A stretch of DNA of 11,908 nt from Octopus sinensis (Eukaryota). The notes under the pieces are model-generated. The model was given only the letters and a program-made list of their open reading frames with translations, was not told the origin of the DNA and did not search any database. The stretch covers positions 1-11,908 of the forward strand of contig NW_021826801.1 in assembly GCF_006345805.1 (NCBI RefSeq), in the 5' to 3' direction. A program made the translations under genes and the position numbers. Positions 431 to 11,908 of the stretch are shown piece after piece. The stretch's first letter is position 1. The number at the start of each line of letters is the position of its first letter.

Positions 431-2669
431 GTTGGCCTGTTTTTAATGTCTGGAAATTTTGTCTCTTCGGAAAAAAACGCATTTAGTTGACTTGAGTATA
501 AATTGAAACAAACACGGGAAAAATATTTGAAGAACATGTCTTGGGGATGGGACCCGTCGGCAGTGTGGTACCCTATGACGAACCGACTTGTCGTTCAGGA
601 TCCACGTGAAAAGTGATTTTGAGGAAATAAAGACGCTAGCAGAGGGGCTTACGGTTTGTCGGAATAATATTTGTAAGGATTTTATACTCGTGAACCCGTC
701 AAAAGTGGCTTAACTTTGCGATGAAAAAGATTAGGAAAAGTCTGTTGGGTTACGTTATCAAGTCGACCAAGTCTTCACTGAGAGACATTCTCAAATTCAA
801 CGACAATCCGTTTGTGGTCATTTGTTCTGCAGTTTTGAAACTGCGGTTGGTGAGTGGTGATATTGGTAGAGACATTTATGTATGGTAATGCAGATGTGGA
901 GGGTGGTGACTGTGCTGCACTCCTCCAAAAGGTTGGCTCGTTTCCCTTCGATTTGAGTCGGTTGGTCGTCTTTGTGACTGTTTTAGAATATATGTGGCCG
1001 AGACTACTCTCGCATTGGAATACCTCCACTCCTATGAAATCGTCCACAGAGATCTGAAGCCGGACAAGTTGTTGTTTGAGATTACCGTAGTCTGCTGATT
1101 ACTGCAAAGGGACATATAAAACTGACTGATTTTGGACTGTCCAAGATTGGGCTGATTAACAGCGCCATCGTCCAGAACTGTCAGGAGTTTAAGGACATGC
1201 AAGTGTTTGGGACACCGGAATATATTGCCCCCGAAGTGATACTTCAGACAGGATATGGTTGAGGACTTGCTGTCTGACCAATTCAGGAAAGCCGGTCGAT
1301 TTGTGGTCACTGGGGATTATTCTTTTCGAATTTCTCGTGGGGACTGTTCCGTACTTTGGAGAAACTCCCGAAGAACTGTTTTTCCATGTCGTCAATGGTT
1401 GTTTATTCACGTGATGAGTAGAAATATTTGAGTGGCCTCCGAGGCTAATCTGCGCGTGGAAGCAGTGGATATTGTCAACCGACTGCTTCAGCATGACCCA
1501 GTAAAGAGGTTGGGCACTGCCGGACTTGACGAGGTCAGAACCATTTTTAATGTCCAAGATCAAAGAACACTCTTTCGTCGTTGGATTGGAGTGCACTTTT
1601 GTGTCAGAAGGTGAGTTATATTCCCAGTATCAGTGAGGACGATGACGTCAGTTTCTTTGATGGTGCCGACTATTACGTAATCCATAGATCGATCCGACCG
1701 TTTCTCCAACCACGGATCGAATGAGAGTGATGAAGTAACGTCAGACATGTTCAGTTCATTCTTATCTCTATCGCCACTGTATGTAAGTCTGAACATAAAC
1801 TCAAACGTGGGTCGATTTGTGCCATGTTTAGGAGTCGGGTTCGTTCTACAGATATTCCGGCAATCGAGTCCCCCGACGAGTATCTCTTGACCAATCAAGT
1901 CACCCAGTTGACTCTCCTCTCAGTTTTTGCAATTCCTTCGACACCTCCGTCAGTTCTTGCTGTGTGTTAATTAGTTGGGAGATGAGACTCCGAGTGCCAT
2001 AAGATCTCCGTCGACAATATATTGGGACACCGGAAAAAGTTACGGTTTCCCCGATTCCATCTTTCAAAATATCGTCAATCATCAACCCAGAGAGGGAGTG
2101 TAAAAAACTGTACTTTGGTTATTTATATTTTAGCATTGAGTCAGGTCTTCAGTTTTCGTAAAACAAGTCCTTCCACTGCCTCCAACACCTCAAAGACGAA
2201 AAACGTTTCCAGTCCGCGTATGAATGTGGTCATTCACCGTGGACTGTGGGGATTTGGCTTTCGTGTTTTGGCCCTCCCTAAACGCTCGTCTGAATATCTT
2301 AAGCACGTGATTGATGTTGACTAATATGTATAATATGAGTAGTCTGTGAGTGGACCGGCTGTTGATGTTGGTCTTAAAGTTGGGACTGTCATAACGCATA
2401 TCAACGTGACGGACATTACTCGATGTCCCATGTTGATGTTGTAACGTATTTTGATGAAGAATGGTCCTGTGGTTGGTCTATGTTGTGACTCTCAGTTGAG
2501 TCTGTCTATAATCGAGAAGCATAATTCGAGGAGGAATCATTTATATCTTTCTAACAGGTTATCAGTTCATTTCGGAGATGTGAAATCAAGTCGTCGAACG
2601 TTTCCGCTCTTCGAAGGAGGGTTGGAACTATTTGGGTCACTCCTGTGGTATTCTGCTTTATGGAACTGA
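125..2669 (+). CDS. MAST: Microtubule-associated serine/threonine (MAST-family) AGC kinase with C-terminal PDZ domain; multi-exon, about a dozen apparent 1-2 nt indels
   Basis: Hand-spliced translation gives LARDLL..DFYSL and R.TRLMEC (DUF1908-like), [152 protein letters not shown], then a PDZ. The start (ATG at 125) needs a +1 T correction. The end is the nearest in-frame stop and is uncertain (true end could be about 2550). Confidence 0.85.
601..1705 (+). other. AGC kinase catalytic domain plus AGC C-terminal tail (MAST type)
   Basis: Gly-loop GAYG, beta3 lysine (FAMKK), [20 protein letters not shown] and DLWSLG are all present. Hydrophobic-tail segment DDVSFFD. Confidence 0.92.
654..2495 (+). 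other. Series of 13 tiny GT-AG spliceosomal introns
   Basis: 654-677 (24 nt), 846-869 (24), 961-986 (26), 1068-1090 (23), 1258-1286 (29), 1398-1421 (24), 1534-1558 (25), 1663-1687 (25), 1807-1831 (25), 1949-1974 (26), 2110-2133 (24), 2316-2342 (27), 2472-2495 (24). Removal rejoins conserved motifs exactly (KPDN|LL, GYG|KPVD, LSR|IYVAE, FFD|DRSDR). The three linker introns (1807, 1949, 2110) and 2472 are less well constrained. Confidence 0.88.
2215..2520 (+). other. PDZ domain of the MAST kinase
   Basis: [15 protein letters not shown] (GLGF-type loop), [26 protein letters not shown], then SHVDVV..LMKNGPV after indel correction. Confidence 0.8.
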
Positions 2670-3240
2670 CAGTTTGATTTCAAAGTTGGATCATCCGTCT
2701 CAGATTTGTCATATTCTGAACCAAAACTTATTGCTGAACCTAAGATTGATGAAACGTCGTACTGCTGTGATGATTCCAAGCACTCTTGCTAATAGTATTG
2801 TATATATGCTTGCTTCTACTATTTCCTCTATGTGCTAGAGCTAGTTCTTATTACTAACCTCCACCAACTGCTTTTATTTATTTTAGAAAGAATGCTGTTT
2901 CAGTCTTGTTTATTTTAGTTCTCTATTGTTGGCATGAAATTATATTGCAATCAAGTTTCTGCAACGACATATAAACTATAATTCCATTAGTGCCTCACAT
3001 CTATCATTATCTTGAGGTCTTCGACATCTTTAGTTTGGTAATTGTTTGAACTCCAGTGAGGGCACTACGTGGGCGAACTATTTTCAACGTGTTTCGTAAA
3101 ATTCTTTTATGGTAATATTTGCAGGCGTGTTCTGCTCTGTTATTAACATTCAAAATAGAGTAGTAAGTGTGCTATTTCTTCCACAATGTTGGATTAGCCT
3201 CTTTCATTTTCATATTTTTCCAAAAAATAACTGGCATTTT
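2567..3240 (-). CDS. Possible convergent tiny-intron gene, unknown function
   Basis: Protein-like stretches (NIVEEIAHLLLYFE; KDVEDLKIMID; EEIVEASIYTILLARVLGIITAVRRF; [15 protein letters not shown]) separated by candidate introns 2976-2998 (23 nt), 2841-2868 (28 nt, GTTGGT donor) and 2716-2739 (24 nt). No continuous frame can be built without indel corrections. Confidence 0.35.
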
Positions 3241-3357: not shown

Positions 3358-3548
3358 TTACGAAAAAAAGAATTCGGTCAAGTGTTCGAAAGCTTCATGG
3401 ACGGGAATCCGACGCGATCGAGAAGAATTAGAGCGTACTATCGCAAGGGATATCCGCTCGAAAAACCATCTTGATTCACGGGCGTCGCCTGTGATAGCAG
3501 ATATGCGGGACCCGATTCCTGAGCGAAGCTGATTGCCTTACTAATCAA
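3358..3548 (-). mobile_element. 3' remnant of a CRE-like non-LTR retrotransposon (end of REL endonuclease region)
   Basis: LISKAISFAQEIGSRISAITGDARESRWFFERISLAIVRSN...LTEFFFS* (one indel) fits the recalled CRE-type ending ELG.RI...TGD.RE..FL.QRLS.A.QRGN. An A-rich tail follows. Confidence 0.55.
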
Positions 3549-3789
3549 GAATATTTGGAATTTATAATTCAAGAATGTGACAGGTAAGAGGCGGAACCAC
3601 GCCGGAGCCGAAACCAAGTTGTTATTTTAATAAACAATAATTTTTTTGATTTAATTTTCATTGGAAAATCATAATTCGTTAATTAAATTAATTAAATATC
3701 AATAATTAATTATAAATAAATCGCATGTTACAATGGTTTTTATTGGATTATCAAAAGAAATGCTTCAAAAATTAAAATTTATAAAAGGA

Positions 3790-3818
3790 CTAGCCGGCAG
3801 CTCGCTTCGCTCACCGCG
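3790..3818 (-). other. Helitron 3' terminus (subterminal hairpin plus CTAG)
   Basis: Minus strand reads gcggtgagcgaagcgagctgccggCTAG|t, about 90 nt downstream of the helicase stop. Confidence 0.8.
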
Positions 3819-3905
3819 ACCTAGCTCCTGCGGAGGGCCTGTTTCATCAAACAACTATAAGTTTATGTAGATGTATAAAACTACCTGGTTTAATGTAACC
3901 CTATT

Positions 3906-4088
3906 CTATCGCTGTTGATAAACGATGTTTGTCGTCCGTCCTTCCTTGGCATATATGAATAAATTTTCTCTTCTGCCTACCCTCGAGCATCCCACATACA
4001 GCTGTCCATGTGAAAAGCACTCACTCTCTAAAAATAACCCAACTACCTTTAATGACTGTCCCTGGGCCTTGTTATTGTCATTGCACAC
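3906..4088 (-). pseudogene. Helitron PIF1-like helicase, C-terminal fragment
   Basis: AMTINKAQGQSLKVVGL.L...CFSHGQLYVGCSRV (one indel); PIF1 helicase motifs V-VI typical of RepHel proteins. Confidence 0.9.
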
Positions 4089-4180
4089 TTTTTTTTTCAT
4101 TTTTGGGGTTTATTTTTTTTTATATTTAATTTTTTCATTTTTCCTTTGTAATTTCCTTTTTTTCTTTTTTGTTTTTTACT

Positions 4181-4264
4181 GGCGGAAATGGGGCAGGGGG
4201 AGATGCGGCAGGCGGAAATGCGGCAGGCAAGAAAGCGACACACAAAAAAGCGACACACAAAAAG
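4181..4264. repeat. Short motif arrays: 3 x 15-nt ggcggaaatgcggca (degenerate) and 2 x aaagcgacacacaaa
   Basis: Direct reading of 4181-4225 and 4232-4264. Confidence 0.8.
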
Positions 4265-4455
4265 ATTTAATTAATTACCTTATTAAGCTGACCGTTTTTT
4301 CTTCAGCTTCGTTTTTCCTCCTTCGGTTATCTATTTAAAAAATTATTTTGATAATAAAAAAGTTTAGGAAAAGAGGCATACCGAAAATAAATTCTATCTT
4401 TACGAAAAACTCAAGTAATAGTTAATATTTTTACGCAAATTCTTCTGATTGCGCT

Positions 4456-4658
4456 GTCAATGGTGGTAAATTGTGTTAATGGTTGTGCTAATGTGGTTTC
4501 AACTATCAAAGTGTTTTTCAAAATCTGTTAATTGCACACTCTATTCAAGTCGTGCGTCAATTGGTGGTAAATTGTGTTAATGATTGTGCTAATGTGGTTT
4601 CAACTATCAAAGTGGTTTTTCAAAATCTGTTAATTGCACACTCTATTCAAAGTCGTGC
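4456..4658. repeat. Tandem duplication, units of 100 and 103 nt
   Basis: 4456-4555 versus 4556-4658 differ by one substitution and three run-length indels. Confidence 0.95.
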
Positions 4659-4866
4659 AATCTGTGATTGCACATTCTGTCAAAGTCAAATATGATAATA
4701 GCTTTAATTTGATTCATGGTCGATAATGATATATGCATTTAATTTTAAAGAGAAAAACATAGGATGAATGAATTTCTTTATCGCGAATAATTGGGAGTTC
4801 ATCATTGTTAATATTCTCGCTGTCGTTTTCATCAAGGATATTTTAATACGTGAGATTTTTGCCTTG

Positions 4867-5284
4867 AAGGTTTTAATGGACCTCATCATGAATGTCGAGG
4901 ACATTCGCGTTGTTCATTTTAATCAAAATGCAGAAAAATAATTTTTTGATTTTTTGGGGGAAAAGGTTTTAAGGACTTCATCATGTAAGTCGAGGACATT
5001 GTAGTTGTTCATTTTAACCAAAATGCAGAAGAAAATTTTTTGATTTTTTGGCGGGAGGTTTTAAGGACCTCATCATGTAAGTCGAGGACATCGTAGTTGT
5101 TCATTTTAACCAAAATGCAGAAAAATTTTTTTAATTTTTTTGGGGGGGAAGGTTTTAAGGACCTCATCATGTAAGTCGAGGACATCGTAGTTGTTCATTT
5201 TGACCAAAACGCAGAAAAATTTTTTTTATTTTTTTGGGGGGGAAGGTTTTAAGGACCTCATCATGTAAGTCGAGGACATCGTAT
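4867..5284. repeat. About 94-bp minisatellite, about 4.4 copies
   Basis: Unit aaggttttaaggacctcatcatgtaagtcgaggacatcgtagttgttcattttaaccaaaatgcagaaaaa(T-run)..(G-run); starts near 4867, 4963, 5055, 5149 and 5243. Confidence 0.95.
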
Positions 5285-5305
5285 TGCCAATTTGAAGTTG
5301 GGTTG

Positions 5306-5371
5306 CACACACAGACAGACAGACAGACACACAGACAGACACACAGACAGACAGACAAGACACACACACAC
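5306..5371. repeat. Mixed (ACAG)n/(AC)n microsatellite
   Basis: cacacacagacagacagacagacacacagacagac... next to the putative Helitron 5' end. Confidence 0.95.
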
Positions 5372-5399
5372 CATACCATTTTATTATTAAGACTATCAA

Positions 5400-6135
5400 A
5401 GAAAGAACGGTTTCGCATCAGAAGCTTCTCAAAGATTTTGCAATTTGACCGAGAAAAAGAAAAAGTCTTTATTTTAGAAAAAGGGAATTTTTGAGGTTCT
5501 TTGCTACTGAAGAAGCTGAATTAAAGATGAAAACTATTGAGGTAAACTTATTGATTAGAATTTTAAGGCTGAGCACAATTCTAACCATTTTGGTAGAAAT
5601 AAGCTTCTTAGTCTATTATCATCTAAAATACAGTCCGACCTCTAATTGGGGCGCACCTCCAGGGTTGGGGCACCTCTTTTTTGGGGAAAACTCTGTTTTG
5701 GGGCATTATAAATATAAAGAGATGGATATCATCAACCAGCGAATCAAACAATCACTTCGAGCAATATCATAAAATACTGAAAAAAATTGTTTATGACTAT
5801 AACATGGCCGTACATGAAACAACTCGACATAAACCTCTTAAGGTGTTTATGCGCGTTGGACATATGGATTCAAAAAGTGCGGATCTAATTGAAGCGCTTT
5901 ATCAATTCGAGGGAGATGACGAAAACGAGGAAATAGATTATAAAGTCATTGAAAATCTCAAAAAAGCGGGAGAAAAAATGAGTAAAAAAAGAAGATGGAA
6001 ATTTGACGAAGAAGATATTGAAGTGGAAGACTCAGTAATTTTGAGAAACGACATCGATGCAAACAGCAGAAAGTTCCTTATATGACGGAATATCTGCCAA
6101 AAAATATACCGTCACTGAAAAAATGGTTATTTTTG
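5400..6135 (+). mobile_element. Degenerate Ginger/KRBA2-like integrase (DDE transposase) relic, copy 1
   Basis: N-terminal LRFFATEEAELK..HNSNHFGRNKLLSLL (integrase zinc-binding H..H half), then LKKIVYDYNMAVHETTRHKP (end of RNase H-fold core) and a C-terminal VILRNDID..YDGI segment. Most of the core is absent. Confidence 0.65.
5631..5680 (+). mobile_element. Solo Tc1/mariner-pogo-like terminal inverted repeat interrupting integrase copy 1
   Basis: TA|CAGTCCGACCTC start with the internal motif ttgggg(cg)cacctc repeated twice. No partner end seen. Confidence 0.4.
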
Positions 6136-6760
6136 TTCTATCAAAGATGGAGTTCGCTCCCGAGGAAGTAGAAGAAAAAAACTGTTTATTGAAAATCTCC
6201 ATTTAAAAAATGGACATCCAGGTCGAGACAAACTGCTTTTTCTCCTTAAAGATACTGTTTATGGATCTTGTAGGAATGAGGTAATGTCAGTTCTCAAATC
6301 ATGCTGCCAATGTAACATGACACTACGAAGCATATTCCATTCAACATTTTTATGGGAGTGGGATATGAAAAAAAACTAAATGATTACATTATGCAGTCTT
6401 TATTGGCTTTTAACTAGTAATTTTTTTTTTCGAAAAGAGCTTATGGGGCATAACAGTGATGATACAGAAAAAGAGGATTTGGAAAATGACAGTGATGACG
6501 AACTTGAGAAAAAGAGAAAGGAAGCTTTCAAAAACATTGTCTCTTGCGGTATAAAATGAATAAAAAAAGAAAATGGAAAAACGATGAGGATGGGCGATCT
6601 TGTACTTCTACGTACAGATAATGACACCAATCGGCCAAGATATCCGTTATATGACGGAATTGATTCCAGCAAACACAAGATCATCAGTGTGAAAAACGAT
6701 CAGTATTTTTTAGAAGGAGAAAATGGTGAGATTGTACCAAAAAAGTTTATTTTTTAACTT
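6136..6760 (+). mobile_element. Degenerate Ginger/KRBA2-like integrase relic, copy 2
   Basis: FIENLHLKNGHPGRDKLLFLLKDTVYG...VLKSCCQC (complete H2C2) joined directly to HDTTKHIPFNIFMG, then GDLVLLRTDND..YDGI, collinear with copy 1. Confidence 0.7.
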
Positions 6761-6839
6761 TTAGAAACGAAAAGATTTTATAATAATTGATGAAACAGAT
6801 ATCCGAAGGAAAAGTTTTGTAGTGATTCTAATTGGAAGC

Positions 6840-7180
6840 ATTCGCTTTCCAACAAAAACAGGGCTGACGGATCGTTCCTTAAGTTCGTGGAATCTAGAAG
6901 AAGGAAATGTTCCGGGATCCTGAGAAGCCTTATACGCTTCCATCTCTCCCCAGACACCTTATCTTCATCTATAAGGCGACTGTAGAACCAGTCCTTATCT
7001 ATGGACATGAAGGTTGGTACCCTACAGACGAGAGAAATCGCATAATCACCAAACTGGAGAAAACAAAGCGCTTTGCGATTAAACTGGCGTATAAGCTACG
7101 GCTTGATCAGGATCTCCCAGAGAGCTAGACGAACAAACTTAAAACATTCGGCAAGTCCTCTGCTCATTGCAAAGGGCATG
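6840..7180 (+). mobile_element. Non-LTR (LINE) reverse transcriptase, post-palm/thumb fragment
   Basis: KCSGILRSL...IFIYKATVEPVLIYGHEGWYP...KLEKTKRFAIK fits the LINE pattern IYK..V.P.L.YG...W.P...KLE..QR.A. Clade not assignable. Confidence 0.7.
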
Positions 7181-8426: not shown

Positions 8427-8843
8427 TCACTCTCTTCTCTTGGAAGAAGAGCATATTTTCAGCTGCCTCTTACTCCCCATTACCACATCTGATTCAACCA
8501 TTGCATCTTCTTTAGCATTCATTGGGTTGTCTTCACCTTTGCATGCCATCTCCACATACCGGTTGGAAGCAGAAGCGTATTCTTCACCAGATACCTTCAT
8601 TCCGTGCTTGTGTTCGATCATCATACTCTCGAGCGTTCTTTTCAGTACAACGGATTGGATGTATTTCCTCGTTCCTGCTTCAATAGATAGTTTCTTCATA
8701 TAATTTTTGAAGCATTTTGAGACAACTCCATCCCATGTCATAACCTCAGGAATTATTTTTACTTGACAGCTATACAGAAGCGAAAGCTCGCTTGCCAGTA
8801 GATCATACTTGTGACACTTTTCAACCTCCACTTGCTTGATGCG
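8427..8843 (-). mobile_element. 5'-truncated REL-type (R2/R4/NeSL group) non-LTR retrotransposon, C-terminal endonuclease region
   Basis: KQVEVEKCHKYDLLASEL....VKIIPEVMTWDGVV...YIQSVVLKRTLES: E.EK..KY..LA.EL..IIP motif that follows the PD-(D/E)xK core. Confidence 0.8.
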
Positions 8844-8845
8844 AA

Positions 8846-9467
8846 AAACTTAAAGAATATTTCAAAGGGAGTCAAATATTTTTAGTAATAGACGAAACCC
8901 AACATTCTTTAAAAATATGTGAACATTATTGCTGGGAAGATTGACAACCCAACCAATATTTATTTAATTGACTGTATTTGTGTTGAGACGTGTGATGCAA
9001 GTTCAATTTGTCAAACAATTGATGATTGCTTACGAAATTACCAAGTTGGGAGAAAAAACTTTGTTTTGTTGTTAACTGATGCTGCACCGTATATGATGTC
9101 AGCCGCAACTAGCATACGTATAATTTATCCGAATATGATTCACCTTAAAGCGAAGGAATAAAGAAATGTGAAGATAATTTTTATACTGTTAAAGATGCTA
9201 TTCAATGTATTAATTCTATCGACTTTGGGGAAGATCCATGTGAGATTGCACAATATTTAAAAAAAGAACAAATTCAATGCCATGGAATAGCATTCAAGAA
9301 GCTAATTTGAGAAATTTTCTTCTTGAATTATTCGTGTATTTATGGAAATGTCCGGGAACCACATTATCTGTCGAAAGAAGTTTCTCGATGCTAAATAAAC
9401 TTTTAGCAAAAACTTAAAGGATGAAAATATTAAACCTTATTTAATGTGTTATTTTAATAAATTTTAA
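8846..9467 (+). mobile_element. hAT-superfamily transposase relic (CGGBP1-like / DUF659 type), internally deleted
   Basis: IFLVIDET (first D), LLTDAAPYM (second D), SVERSFSML (E, dimerisation region). The sequence jumps near 9145 from YPNMIHL to the C-terminal region, losing the CxxH motif and insertion domain. Confidence 0.8.
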
Positions 9468-9481
9468 TTCTTAATGATATA

Positions 9482-10934
9482 CACCCCTCGTCACCGAAAA
9501 CCGGACAAGCCATTTTTTATGATTTTATTAATAAATACGAAAATCAAAAACTTACGCTTAATATTTTTACTTAATAATAATAATTGTGTAATAATTATTA
9601 ATTTTACTATTTTAGAACTAATATTTAAAGCAGAATTTCAATTACTTAAGACATGTAAAACCGGACAAAACTTTTATAGATCTAAAAGTCGTTGAAAAGA
9701 AGCTAAAATGTATAGTCAAAGAAGAAGTCACCTTTCAAATTTCCTGAAAGGACAATTATTGCATTTTATAATCATAATATGACTTATCGAATGATTTCTG
9801 CAAGTATAGGAGTCCCAAAATCAACTGTATCAGATGTGATTCAGAAATTCAAAAAACTGGATCAATTAACATACATCCGGGAACTGAAAGAAAGAAAATA
9901 TTGATAGAGGAAGAAATTTTGATTTTAGTAGAACTATCAAATAATACCCCTCATAAAAGTGCCAAAACTCTTAGCATCGAAATTAAAACTATGTTCAAAA
10001 AAAAATTTTAACAAGAATAGTATCTCGAATTTTAAATAAGAAAAGATTATATGGCCGAGCTGCTAAAAGAAAACCTCCTTTATCCACAAAAAATATAATT
10101 TTAAGACGTGAAATTACGAAATCATTTTTAAGCATTTCCGACGAGACATGGAAGTCGGTAATTTTTACTGATGAATGGTCTTTTGATATTTTTAATGTCA
10201 ATAAGCATCAAATAGTGTATAGAGAAAATGGTTCTGCATACAAAAATGCAATATTATCCCAACTGTAAAATTCGGTGGTGGAAAAGTAATGGTCTGGGGC
10301 AGTTTCTCGTATAACGGAGTCGGTAATTCTTGTTTTTTATTGATGAAATTCTTTATAGCGCAAAATATATTAATATTTTATCTAATAATATATTCGAATG
10401 TGCCAAAAAATTCGGGATAGACTCATTTATTTTACAACAGGATAATGCACCTTGCCATAAATCTAAAATGATACAAGATTATATAAAGAAAAAAACATTA
10501 TTTACTTCAATGGCCTGCTCGATCACCGGATCTAAACCCGATAGAACATCTATGGACAGAAATGCAGAGAGAATTATCAAAAAATGTAGTCAAAAACAAA
10601 AATGAAAAACGTTATAAAATTTTCAGTGCAAATGTGGACATATTAACTACTAAATGACTTGTTTTTATTTTGTCCGGTTTTACATGTCTTAAGTAAATTG
10701 AAATTCTGCTTTAAATATTAGTTCTATAATAGTATAATTAATAATTATTACACAATTATTATTATTAAGTAAAAATTTTTTTTTTTGAAAAACACTTTGA
10801 TATTTTTTTTTTTTTTGACAAACCAACCAATAATACAAGTTAATTAATTAAATATTAAGCTTAAGTTTTTGATTTTTCATATTTAATTAATAAAATCATC
10901 AAAAATAGCTTGTCCGGTTTTCAGTGACTAGATG
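9482..10934 (+). mobile_element. Tc1-family transposon with long IR-DR-type terminal inverted repeats
   Basis: TA|CACCCCTCGTCACCGAAAACCGGACAAGC at left. Left TIR 9482-9670 matches the reverse complement of 10668-10934, and each TIR carries outer and inner AAAACCGGACAA repeats. The right TIR has an insertion of about 80 nt and a degenerate tip. Confidence 0.9.
9708..10646 (+). pseudogene. Tc1 DD34E transposase (frameshifted, C-terminus shortened)
   Basis: HTH GVPKSTVSDVI, WKSVIFTDE, TVKFGGGKVMVWG, FILQQDNAPCH, WPARSPDLNPIEHLW. D-E spacing is 34 after restoring two homopolymer bases. Confidence 0.92.
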
Positions 10935-11019
10935 AAAAACTAAAAATAAGCAAATCTAAATATGTAAACACCATTTTTATTTGGAATTGTCACCTGCATC
11001 TAGGATGAGGTAAAAAATT

Positions 11020-11908
11020 GTTGAAAAAAACTGGCAACTCATGAAAAAAGAAAAGAATTCCGGAGGGACAATGTGTGTTTTGAACTTAACCGAAGGCAGT
11101 TTTACAGAAACTTGACTGAGAAAAAGAAAAATACGCAGTCTATGTTTGACCAGAGTCAGTGTCTCTCATTTCCGGATTGGAGCAAAACGCAAAAAGTCTG
11201 CAACTAATCTTGAAGGGTTGAGTGGCAAAGCTAAGCTGCTTGACGGAATTGATGGCTATCGTTACCTTGAAGTATTGGAAGACAAGGTTAGCAGGTTCTG
11301 AAGAATGACACGATGAACTCAATATCAAATCCAGTCGAGAAGAGATTTAATAGTCTGGCAGACTCGAAGCTGAATTCTGAAAATTTTTTCAAGCCTGTCA
11401 ATGAGCATGCATTATCGCTGTATAATTTCTACATCGGGCTCATTGATATCGAACCATGCGAATTTGAGAGCATCGACAAGAATGTGCGCAAGATTTTGAT
11501 ACGCCACCAAATACCATGAAATCTGGAAACAAACATAGACTTTATCTTTCAAGAGACCGACTAGGAAGAGGATTGGTTTCTGTGGTGCATAAAACCGAGC
11601 GAATGCTTCTTGAATTCCTCAAGGACATTAGATGAAGGCTTCCTATTGTTTGAGGAGAGAAGCAATCCTGAAGGCCGTCAGATTCAAGAAAACTCATATG
11701 CCCACTATCAAGGAATTCCTATGCAGAAAGTATCATTTGCAACTTCGGAAAGCCTCAAACTGAATGTTCTGAAGGATTTGCAAGGAAAGCACTTAATTTA
11801 AAGATATGAAAAAAGCCGCTTCACTAGATTTTGTTTAATTGCTATAATGATTTGTACGTGGATCTGAAGAATCGTCCTGGTGGTTATCTCATGAGAACAA
11901 CTCTCCAA
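11020..11908 (+). mobile_element. REL-type non-LTR retrotransposon relic with RT core deleted; runs off the window
   Basis: HEKRKEFRRDNVCFELNRRQFYRNL (pre-RT region) joined at about 11172 to GLE..KKSATN...YRYLEVLEDK (last RT motif), then KLNSENFFKPVNEHALSLYN and RLYLSRDRLGRGLVSV. Confidence 0.8.

What the first reader, a model, noticed from the sequence alone, without database searches (positions are those of the whole stretch)
654..2495. Intron-dense animal kinase gene in which every intron is only 23-29 nt
Seen: 13 GT-AG introns of 23-29 nt separate exons of about 80-180 nt, and eight of them fall inside the kinase and tail and restore conserved motifs exactly. Known: introns this small are below the roughly 40-70 nt minimum of most animals and are reported mainly from dicyemids, some other reduced parasites, Paramecium and nucleomorphs. 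The MAST-plus-PDZ architecture is metazoan-type. Inferred: the host keeps a high intron density but has a spliceosome adapted to ultra-short substrates. This is the strongest candidate for an unusual system in the window.
Basis: partly seen in the sequence, partly recalled or inferred. Interest (0 to 1): 0.8.

Follow-up and report, generated by a model that had tools for sequence, protein, structure and literature searches.

The report
Dicyemid-type kinase gene, tiny introns
This is a MAST-type protein kinase gene whose introns are only 23-29 bases long, a known trait of dicyemid parasites of octopus, and the copy here carries about a dozen one- or two-base frameshifts that are most likely long-read sequencing errors.

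Summary
The tiny introns are real. Ten GT-AG introns of 23-29 nt (mean 25.1) are fixed by homology to MAST kinases and MAST PDZ domains. Three sit at the same position and phase as 82-822-nt introns of a fish MAST gene. Nine of ten carry a branch-like TRAY motif 7-10 nt from the 3' end, and seven begin GTTG.

Splicing alone does not restore the reading frame. At least 12 one- or two-base frameshifts remain, with no in-frame stop and all catalytic motifs intact. Repeats in the window show the same excess of single-base deletions, so I read them as long-read indel errors. A young pseudogene is the rival.

The host is most likely a dicyemid. The window's repeats match, at 92-98%, contigs of the Octopus sinensis GenBank assembly. 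At least two of the four contigs sampled carry tiny-intron genes of their own (SLC12, Ric8), so they look like parasite contaminants.

Ultra-short introns in dicyemids have been described since 2007, and in myxobolid myxozoans in 2026. The finding is genuine but is an instance of a known genome-wide trait.

The parts
536..2672 (+). MAST-type serine/threonine kinase gene: short N-terminus, kinase domain, AGC tail, linker, PDZ domain, short C-terminus. About 1.78 kb of exons.
   Evidence: Three-frame translation, spliced alignment, reconstruction, Pfam. The ATG at 536 and the stop at 2670-2672 are inferred.
615..1600 (+). Protein kinase domain. In the frameshift-corrected reading it keeps GxGxxG (SRGAYG), AMKK, ERDIL, HRDLKPDN, DFG and APE.
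   Evidence: Pkinase E=2.6e-54, residues 17-281. About 60% identity to vertebrate MAST1/3 fragments.
2241..2510 (+). MAST-type PDZ domain.
   Evidence: PDZ E=3.3e-6. Best solved-structure hits are the PDZ domains of MAST3, MAST2 and MAST4.
654..677 (+). Intron 1, 24 nt, GTTTGT...TAAG, in the last Gly codon of GAYG.
   Evidence: Same codon as a 90-nt fish MAST intron; the phase is blurred by a neighbouring frameshift.
846..869 (+). Intron 2, 24 nt, phase 0 (FETA|RHLC). It has an in-frame TGA if retained.
961..986 (+). Intron 3, 26 nt, phase 2 (DLS-R-IYVAE).
1068..1090 (+). Intron 4, 23 nt, phase 2, splitting the Asn codon of HRDLKPDN.
   Evidence: Same position and phase as an 822-nt fish intron.
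1258..1286 (+). Intron 5, 29 nt, phase 1 (GY-G-KPVD).
1398..1421 (+). Intron 6, 24 nt, phase 1, just before IFEWP. It has an in-frame TGA if retained.
   Evidence: Same position and phase as a 166-nt fish intron.
1534..1558 (+). Intron 7, 25 nt, phase 0 (GLDE|IKEH).
1663..1687 (+). Intron 8, 25 nt, phase 1, after SFFD in the AGC tail.
   Evidence: Same position and phase as an 82-nt fish intron.
2316..2342 (+). Intron 9, 27 nt, phase 0, inside the PDZ domain (HVID|SVSG). It has an in-frame TAA if retained.
2472..2495 (+). Intron 10, 24 nt, phase 0, inside the PDZ domain (NGPV|LSLS).
565..598 (+). Possible extra intron of 34 nt (or 568-598, 31 nt). It would join the ATG exon to the kinase exon without a frameshift.
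   Evidence: Candidate list and reconstruction. Inferred only.
1807..2133 (+).
   Evidence: No homologue of this stretch exists in the libraries. They lack GTTG and a TRAY at 7-10. The codon-usage scan was inconclusive.
636..893 (+). Cluster of seven 1-2-nt frameshifts, at about 638, 680, 693, 750, 784, 822 and 891.
   Evidence: Homology jumps between frames with no intron in between, for example [12 protein letters not shown] in one frame and [13 protein letters not shown] in the next.
1438..1578 (+). Two frameshifts, at about 1439 and 1577.
2421..2445 (+). Two frameshifts inside the PDZ domain, on either side of MSHVDVV.

Best explanation
The window is a repeat-rich stretch of the nuclear genome of a dicyemid, a roughly 30-cell parasite of cephalopod kidneys. 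It most likely comes from a long-read assembly of the parasite, or of its octopus host with parasite DNA co-assembled.

It carries a MAST-family kinase gene (kinase, AGC tail, PDZ; no DUF1908 domain seen) broken by at least 10 and probably 13-14 ordinary U2-type GT-AG introns that have shrunk to 23-29 nt. Several are ancient introns still at their ancestral positions.

Each tiny intron packs the three usual signals end to end: a 5' site (mostly G|GTTGKT), a branch-like TRAY with its A 7-10 nt from the 3' end, and (T/C/A)AG. Most would shift the frame or bring in a stop if retained, so they have to be removed.

The 12 or more 1-2-nt frameshifts are most likely uncorrected long-read indel errors and not biology.

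Shown: gene identity, intron boundaries and their conservation, motif enrichment, shared repeats with tiny-intron contigs, and the deletion bias. Inferred: actual splicing, the dicyemid identity, and that the frameshifts are errors.
For: - Gene and introns.
- Three introns match fish MAST introns in position and phase, and a fourth lies in the same codon.
- TRAY at 7-10 nt in 9/10 (P=6e-10) and GTTG in 7/10 (P=9e-6) against decoys.
- Intron lengths of 25.1 +/- 1.8 nt fit Dicyema (26.2 +/- 1.9, PMC2222250; median 27, PMC6543705).
- Window GC of 35% and its heavy load of transposon fragments fit D. japonicum (GC 36.7%, repeats 48.9%, assembly partly PacBio/Falcon; PMC6736024).
- A transposon ORF at 8427-8831 has only three homologues, all labelled Octopus sinensis.
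- Window repeats match those contigs at 98% (3786-4085), 92% (3389-3542) and 90-94% (4178-5392).
- Two of those contigs carry SLC12, Sin3 and Ric8 genes packed closely, with 28-, 27- and 25-nt GT-AG introns. The spliced products give single unbroken Pfam matches.
- O. sinensis is the host of D. japonicum (PMC6736024).
- Error reading: gaps between the window and the loci are 15 deletions against 7 insertions in the window. Duplicated copies inside one octopus-assembly contig differ by 28 single-base indels against 20 substitutions. The gene has no in-frame stop in about 520 codons and all kinase motifs are intact.
Against: - No sequence from a named dicyemid could be compared, so the host rests on indirect evidence.
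- The published 5' logo for D. japonicum is 'GTa' (PMC13644364), while 8 of 10 introns here have T at the third position.
- The frameshifts cluster: 7 fall in 638-891 and 2 in the next 770 nt of the gene (about 600 nt of coding sequence). A uniform error rate would not give that.
- A 405-nt transposon ORF at 8427-8831 is intact.
- No transcript evidence is available.
- The loci fetched from the contigs with the 98% match (L001-L003) showed only transposon genes.
Confidence: 0.8

Rival explanations
1. The frameshifts are real. This is a recently disabled MAST copy (a pseudogene) lying among transposons in a dicyemid genome, and its tiny introns are relics.
For: - At least 12 frameshifts, so no reading through is possible.
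- They cluster in 638-891.
- The setting is rich in transposon debris.
- No DUF1908 domain or upstream exons are seen.
Against: - There are no in-frame stops and all catalytic motifs are kept. Neutral decay with this many indels should also have produced several stops.
- Non-coding repeats in the window show the same excess of single-base deletions.
- Related contigs show indel-dominated differences typical of unpolished long reads.
Confidence: 0.17
2. The host is another animal with ultra-short introns, such as a myxobolid myxozoan or an undescribed lineage, and not a dicyemid.
For: - Myxobolids have median intron lengths of 22-27 nt (PMC13644364).
- The GTTG 5' bias does not match the published D. 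japonicum logo.
- No named dicyemid sequence was matched.
Against: - The window shares repeats at 92-98% with contigs of an octopus assembly that carry tiny-intron genes. Octopus is the dicyemid host, while the myxosporean myxozoans described in that paper alternate between annelids and fish.
- H. salminicola has a GC of 29% and myxozoans are described as having few transposons (PMC13644364).
Confidence: 0.04
3. Dicyemid DNA carrying this gene was transferred into the octopus genome and is now decaying there.
For: - The flanks match repeats on contigs labelled O. sinensis, at up to 98%.
- The loci fetched from those particular contigs showed only transposon genes.
- The gene is frameshifted.
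Against: - Other contigs with the same repeat families are gene-dense and have tiny introns of their own, so they are parasite-type and not octopus-type.
- 14% of that assembly is unplaced and its duplicated-BUSCO rate is high at 5.2% (PMC10700109), which fits co-assembled parasite DNA.
Confidence: 0.03
4. The short segments are not introns. They are chance GT...AG strings, or insertions that are translated.
For: No transcript data were available.
Against: - 4 of the 5 introns whose length is a multiple of three carry in-frame stops, and the other 5 introns shift the frame.
- Conserved positions and phases.
- Strong motif enrichment.
- GT-AG scored best of 11 dinucleotide pairs.
Confidence: 0.01

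Closest known systems
Ultra-short spliceosomal introns of dicyemids (Dicyema acuticephalum, D. japonicum, Dicyema sp.)
   Same: GT-AG introns in a narrow range around 26 nt, high intron density, ancestral positions kept, and a repeat-rich genome of about 36% GC (PMC2222250, PMC6543705, PMC6736024). Association with an octopus host.
   Different: No direct sequence match to a named dicyemid was possible. The 5' site here is mostly GTTG, while the published genome-wide logo is 'GTa'. This copy is frameshifted.
Ultra-short introns of myxobolid myxozoans (Henneguya salminicola, Thelohanellus kitauei, Myxobolus)
   Same: Median intron length of 22-27 nt, reduced splice signals, and A residues upstream of the 3' AG (PMC13644364).
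   Different: The myxosporeans described alternate between annelids and fish, and the genomes are lower in GC and poorer in transposons. Nothing links the window to them, while its repeats tie it to an octopus assembly.
Tiny introns of Paramecium and other ciliates, and of chlorarachniophyte nucleomorphs
   Same: Intron lengths of 15-35 nt with GT-AG ends.
   Different: These are not animals. A MAST kinase at 60% identity to vertebrates with a MAST-type PDZ domain points to an animal host, and standard stop codon use is consistent here.
MAST kinases (human MAST1-4, Drosophila drop out)
   Same: An AGC kinase domain most similar to MAST, the AGC tail, and a downstream PDZ domain whose best solved relatives are MAST PDZ domains.
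   Different: No DUF1908 domain within the window. The whole protein would be only about 590 residues, against 1300-2600 in vertebrates.

Membership tests
MAST kinase family | AGC-type kinase domain most similar to MAST kinases | tested here: met
   Pkinase E=2.6e-54. The named top hits are MAST1/3/4 at 54-60% identity, against 41-48% for fungal, plant and choanoflagellate kinases.
MAST kinase family | PDZ domain C-terminal to the kinase | tested here: met
   PDZ E=3.3e-6. Best solved-structure hits are the MAST3, MAST2 and MAST4 PDZ domains.
MAST kinase family | N-terminal DUF1908 (PF08926) domain | tested here: not met
   tblastn with nine DUF1908-bearing homologues found nothing upstream of position 600. 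The domain could still lie beyond the 5' end of the window.
MAST kinase family | Intact open reading frame | tested here: not met
   At least 12 frameshifts remain after the introns are removed. Probably sequencing error.
U2-type GT-AG spliceosomal introns | GT at the 5' end and AG at the 3' end, at boundaries set independently by protein homology | tested here: met
   10 of 10. GT-AG scored best of 11 dinucleotide pairs.
U2-type GT-AG spliceosomal introns | Positions and phases shared with orthologous genes | tested here: met
   Three exact matches and one same-codon match to a fish MAST gene.
U2-type GT-AG spliceosomal introns | Branch-point-like motif upstream of the 3' site | tested here: met
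   TRAY with its A 7-10 nt from the 3' end in 9 of 10, against 7% of decoys. The motif was chosen after looking at the sequences.
U2-type GT-AG spliceosomal introns | Removal from the mature mRNA | not testable with these tools
   No transcript data were available.
Dicyemid nuclear genome | Intron lengths tightly clustered around 26-27 nt | tested here: met
   25.1 +/- 1.8 nt for 10 introns, against 26.2 +/- 1.9 (PMC2222250).
Dicyemid nuclear genome | Physical association with a cephalopod host | tested here: met
   Repeats match contigs of the O. sinensis assembly at 92-98%, and those contigs carry tiny-intron genes. This evidence is indirect.
Dicyemid nuclear genome | Sequence identity to a named dicyemid genome or transcriptome | not testable with these tools
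   No dicyemid sequence is within reach. Library searches found no protein from the same species.

The most novel reading that the evidence does not exclude
The window is true octopus chromosomal DNA into which a piece of dicyemid genome, tiny introns included, was transferred from parasite to host and is now decaying by frameshifts.
Probability: 0.03. Interest if true: 0.75.

Novelty: new member of a known kind. Interest (0 to 1): 0.3.

Why it matters
- It adds a clean, homology-anchored example of how small a working animal intron can be. Ancient introns of 82-822 nt in fish are cut to 23-25 nt here, yet still carry a 5' site, a branch-like motif at a fixed distance, and AG.
- The fixed spacing (branch A about 13-19 nt from the 5' end and 7-10 nt from the 3' end) could be tested in splicing assays.
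- The practical by-product may matter more. Contigs in the public Octopus sinensis assembly, and RefSeq proteins named after it, appear to belong to its dicyemid parasite. That can mislead work on cephalopod genes and transposons.
- The phenomenon itself is already well described, so the finding is not a new system.

Tried and rejected
- Exact look-ups of window ORFs found nothing. They may have failed partly because the translations included stop codons or non-ATG starts.
- An exact 26-mer from the kinase gene was absent from the viral, metagenome and prokaryote collections.
- A search with the linker plus PDZ found no hits. An exhaustive search with exon 2136-2315 gave one weak low-complexity hit. 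So no independent copy of the gene was found to check the frameshifts.
- The protein search appears to return only proteins up to about 1.75 times the query length. Full-length MAST proteins were therefore never listed.
- Reading the frameshifts as extra introns fails, because both frames carry MAST homology right up to each shift. The one exception is the first shift, which a 31/34-nt intron at 565/568-598 can explain.
- Ciliate-style stop-codon reassignment or Euplotes-type +1 frameshift sites: the sequence context does not fit.
- A codon-usage scan could not settle the linker reading frames.
- Rfam and tRNA scans of the window found nothing.
- Pfam on transposon ORFs in the window gave only weak hits, to a Tc1/mariner HTH domain and to DUF659.

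Full report
**What is there**

Three-frame translation of 500-2900 shows MAST kinase motifs spread over all three frames. A search with a draft kinase sequence returned MAST1/3/4 fragments at 54-60% identity from vertebrates, Drosophila, a rotifer and nematodes. Fungal, plant and choanoflagellate kinases reached only 41-48%. The gene is therefore of animal type.

I ran a spliced protein-to-DNA alignment of my own, allowing GT-AG introns and frameshifts. It placed seven introns in the kinase domain. Inspection of the AGC tail and the PDZ region added three more.

The frameshift-corrected, spliced product scores Pkinase E=2.6e-54 and PDZ E=3.3e-6. The PDZ domain's best solved relatives are the PDZ domains of MAST3, MAST2 and MAST4. 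No DUF1908 domain was found upstream.

**Are the introns real?**

Ten introns are fixed by homology: 654-677, 846-869, 961-986, 1068-1090, 1258-1286, 1398-1421, 1534-1558, 1663-1687, 2316-2342 and 2472-2495. Their lengths are 24, 24, 26, 23, 29, 24, 25, 25, 27 and 24 nt (mean 25.1, SD 1.8). All are GT-AG.

- Five have lengths that are not multiples of three. Four of the five that are multiples of three contain in-frame stops. Retaining almost any of them would wreck the protein.
- In a control, GT-AG gave the highest alignment score of 11 dinucleotide pairs and needed no inserted codons.
- I mapped the introns of a fish MAST1-like gene (P0010 on L007) and of a rotifer gene, then aligned the proteins.
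- Three window introns match fish introns in both column and phase: HRDLKPD|N in phase 2 (23 nt against 822 nt), before IEWP in phase 1 (24 against 166), and after S(Y/F)FD in phase 1 (25 against 82). A fourth lies in the same Gly codon of GAYG. About 0.07 exact matches are expected by chance.
- Against 202 same-length GT...AG decoys from the window, the real introns are enriched for a TRAY motif with its A 7-10 nt from the 3' end (9/10 against 7%, P=6e-10). They are also enriched for a GTTG start (7/10 against 10%, P=9e-6). I chose the TRAY motif after looking at the sequences, so that P value is generous.

Removing the introns does not open the frame. Homology jumps between frames with no room for an intron. 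For example, [11 protein letters not shown], then [12 protein letters not shown], then [13 protein letters not shown], then LFCSFETA lie in alternating frames within 130 nt.

I count nine shifts in the kinase region, two in the PDZ domain and at least one in the linker. One more apparent shift near 604 can instead be explained by a 31/34-nt intron at 568/565-598.

The linker has no homologue in any library, the three lack GTTG and a well-placed TRAY, and codon statistics were inconclusive.

**Errors or pseudogene?**

- There is no in-frame stop in about 520 codons, and every catalytic motif is intact.
- In alignments of the window's non-coding repeats to related loci, gaps are mostly single-base deletions in the window. 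There are 15 deletion events, 11 of them of one base, against 7 insertions.
- Two near-identical copies inside one related contig differ by 28 single-base indels against 20 substitutions. That is the signature of unpolished long reads.

I therefore favour sequencing error, at about 0.7 within the main explanation. The clustering of seven shifts in 638-891 and an intact 405-nt transposon ORF elsewhere keep the pseudogene reading alive.

**Whose genome?**

- Exact and homology look-ups found no copy of the gene.
- A transposon ORF at 8427-8831 has only three homologues in the protein library. All are 'uncharacterized protein [Octopus sinensis]', on contigs of assembly GCA_006345805.1.
- The window shares several repeat families with about 110 kb sampled from those contigs: 98% over 3786-4085, 92% over 3389-3542, 90-94% over 4178-5392, and weaker matches elsewhere.
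- These contigs are not octopus-like. The sample holds Sin3, an SLC12-type transporter, Ric8, Fis1, HORMA and other cellular genes. Sin3 and SLC12 lie 2.7 kb apart.
- SLC12 (L005) has 28- and 27-nt GT-AG introns and Ric8 (L004) a 25-nt one. The spliced products give single unbroken Pfam matches.
- O. sinensis is the host from which D. japonicum was sequenced (PMC6736024).
- Only 86% of the O. sinensis assembly is placed on chromosomes, and its duplicated-BUSCO rate of 5.2% is the highest among octopus assemblies (PMC10700109).

The simplest reading is that the window and these contigs belong to a dicyemid. One weak point remains: the loci I fetched from the two contigs with the 98% match (L001-L003) showed only transposon genes.

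**Comparison with what is known**

- Dicyema genes have introns of 26.2 +/- 1.9 nt at conserved positions (PMC2222250).
- Dicyema sp. has a median intron length of 27 nt (PMC6543705).
- The D. japonicum genome is 36.7% GC and 48.9% repeats, and was built partly from PacBio RS II reads (PMC6736024).
- A 2026 paper shows the same intron size range in myxobolid myxozoans, with reduced splice signals and A residues upstream of the AG (PMC13644364).

The window fits the dicyemid picture on every point I could test, with one exception. Its 5' site is mostly GTT(G), while the published logo is 'GTa'. Two of the three introns I found on the octopus-assembly contigs start GTG or GTA, so the GTTG bias may be local or a small-sample effect.

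**Verdict**

Noticed in passing
L004 (VCDQ01009738.1, 40688-61380) and L005 (VCDQ01013470.1, 131379-152074) of GCA_006345805.1: Contigs of the public Octopus sinensis assembly carry closely packed Sin3, SLC12 and Ric8 genes. SLC12 and Ric8 have 25-28-nt introns. These contigs look like co-assembled dicyemid DNA, and RefSeq names proteins on contigs of this set (P0121-P0123) as octopus proteins.
   Followed up: partly
window 536-700: The MAST gene seems to start only about 25 codons before the kinase domain, with no DUF1908 domain. That would make a 'mini-MAST' of about 590 residues, unless the 5' exons lie beyond the window.
   Followed up: partly
window introns listed in 'parts': 8 of 10 introns have T at the third position and 7 of 10 start GTTG, usually after an exonic G. 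This differs from the 'GTa' logo published for D. japonicum.
   Followed up: partly
window 636-893: Seven of the nine kinase-region frameshifts fall within 260 nt. That is more clustered than a uniform error rate predicts (binomial P of about 0.001, my own calculation).
   Followed up: no
window 9487-10931: A Tc1/mariner-like element with long terminal inverted repeats made of several segments (about 9487-9670 and 10668-10931; 84-nt arms 96% complementary, 29-nt arms 100%). Between them lies a degraded transposase (weak HTH_Tnp_Tc3_2 hit).
   Followed up: partly
window 4866-5283 and 5306-5370: A 94-nt tandem repeat (4.5 copies) followed by an (ACAG)n microsatellite. The same array occurs at 90-94% identity on octopus-assembly contig VCDQ01002631.1.
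   Followed up: partly
window 3786-4109: A fragment 98% identical to a sequence in L001/L002. The minus strand reads like the C-terminal end of a Pif1/Helitron-type helicase (GQLYVGCSRV...). Those loci also gave Pif1_2B hits.
   Followed up: partly
window 3361-3542, 5627-7130, 8427-9420, 11000-11908: Fragments of other mobile elements: the 3' end of a LINE (92% to an 829-residue reverse transcriptase ORF in L005), integrase-like pieces, a reverse-transcriptase C-terminal ORF, and hAT-like pieces. About three quarters of the window is repeat debris. Family names rest mostly on resemblance, since Pfam support was weak.
   Followed up: partly
L001 vs L002 (VCDQ01002631.1): A tandem duplication of about 13.6 kb whose two copies are 99.3% identical and differ mainly by single-base indels. 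This suggests these contigs escaped short-read polishing.
   Followed up: partly
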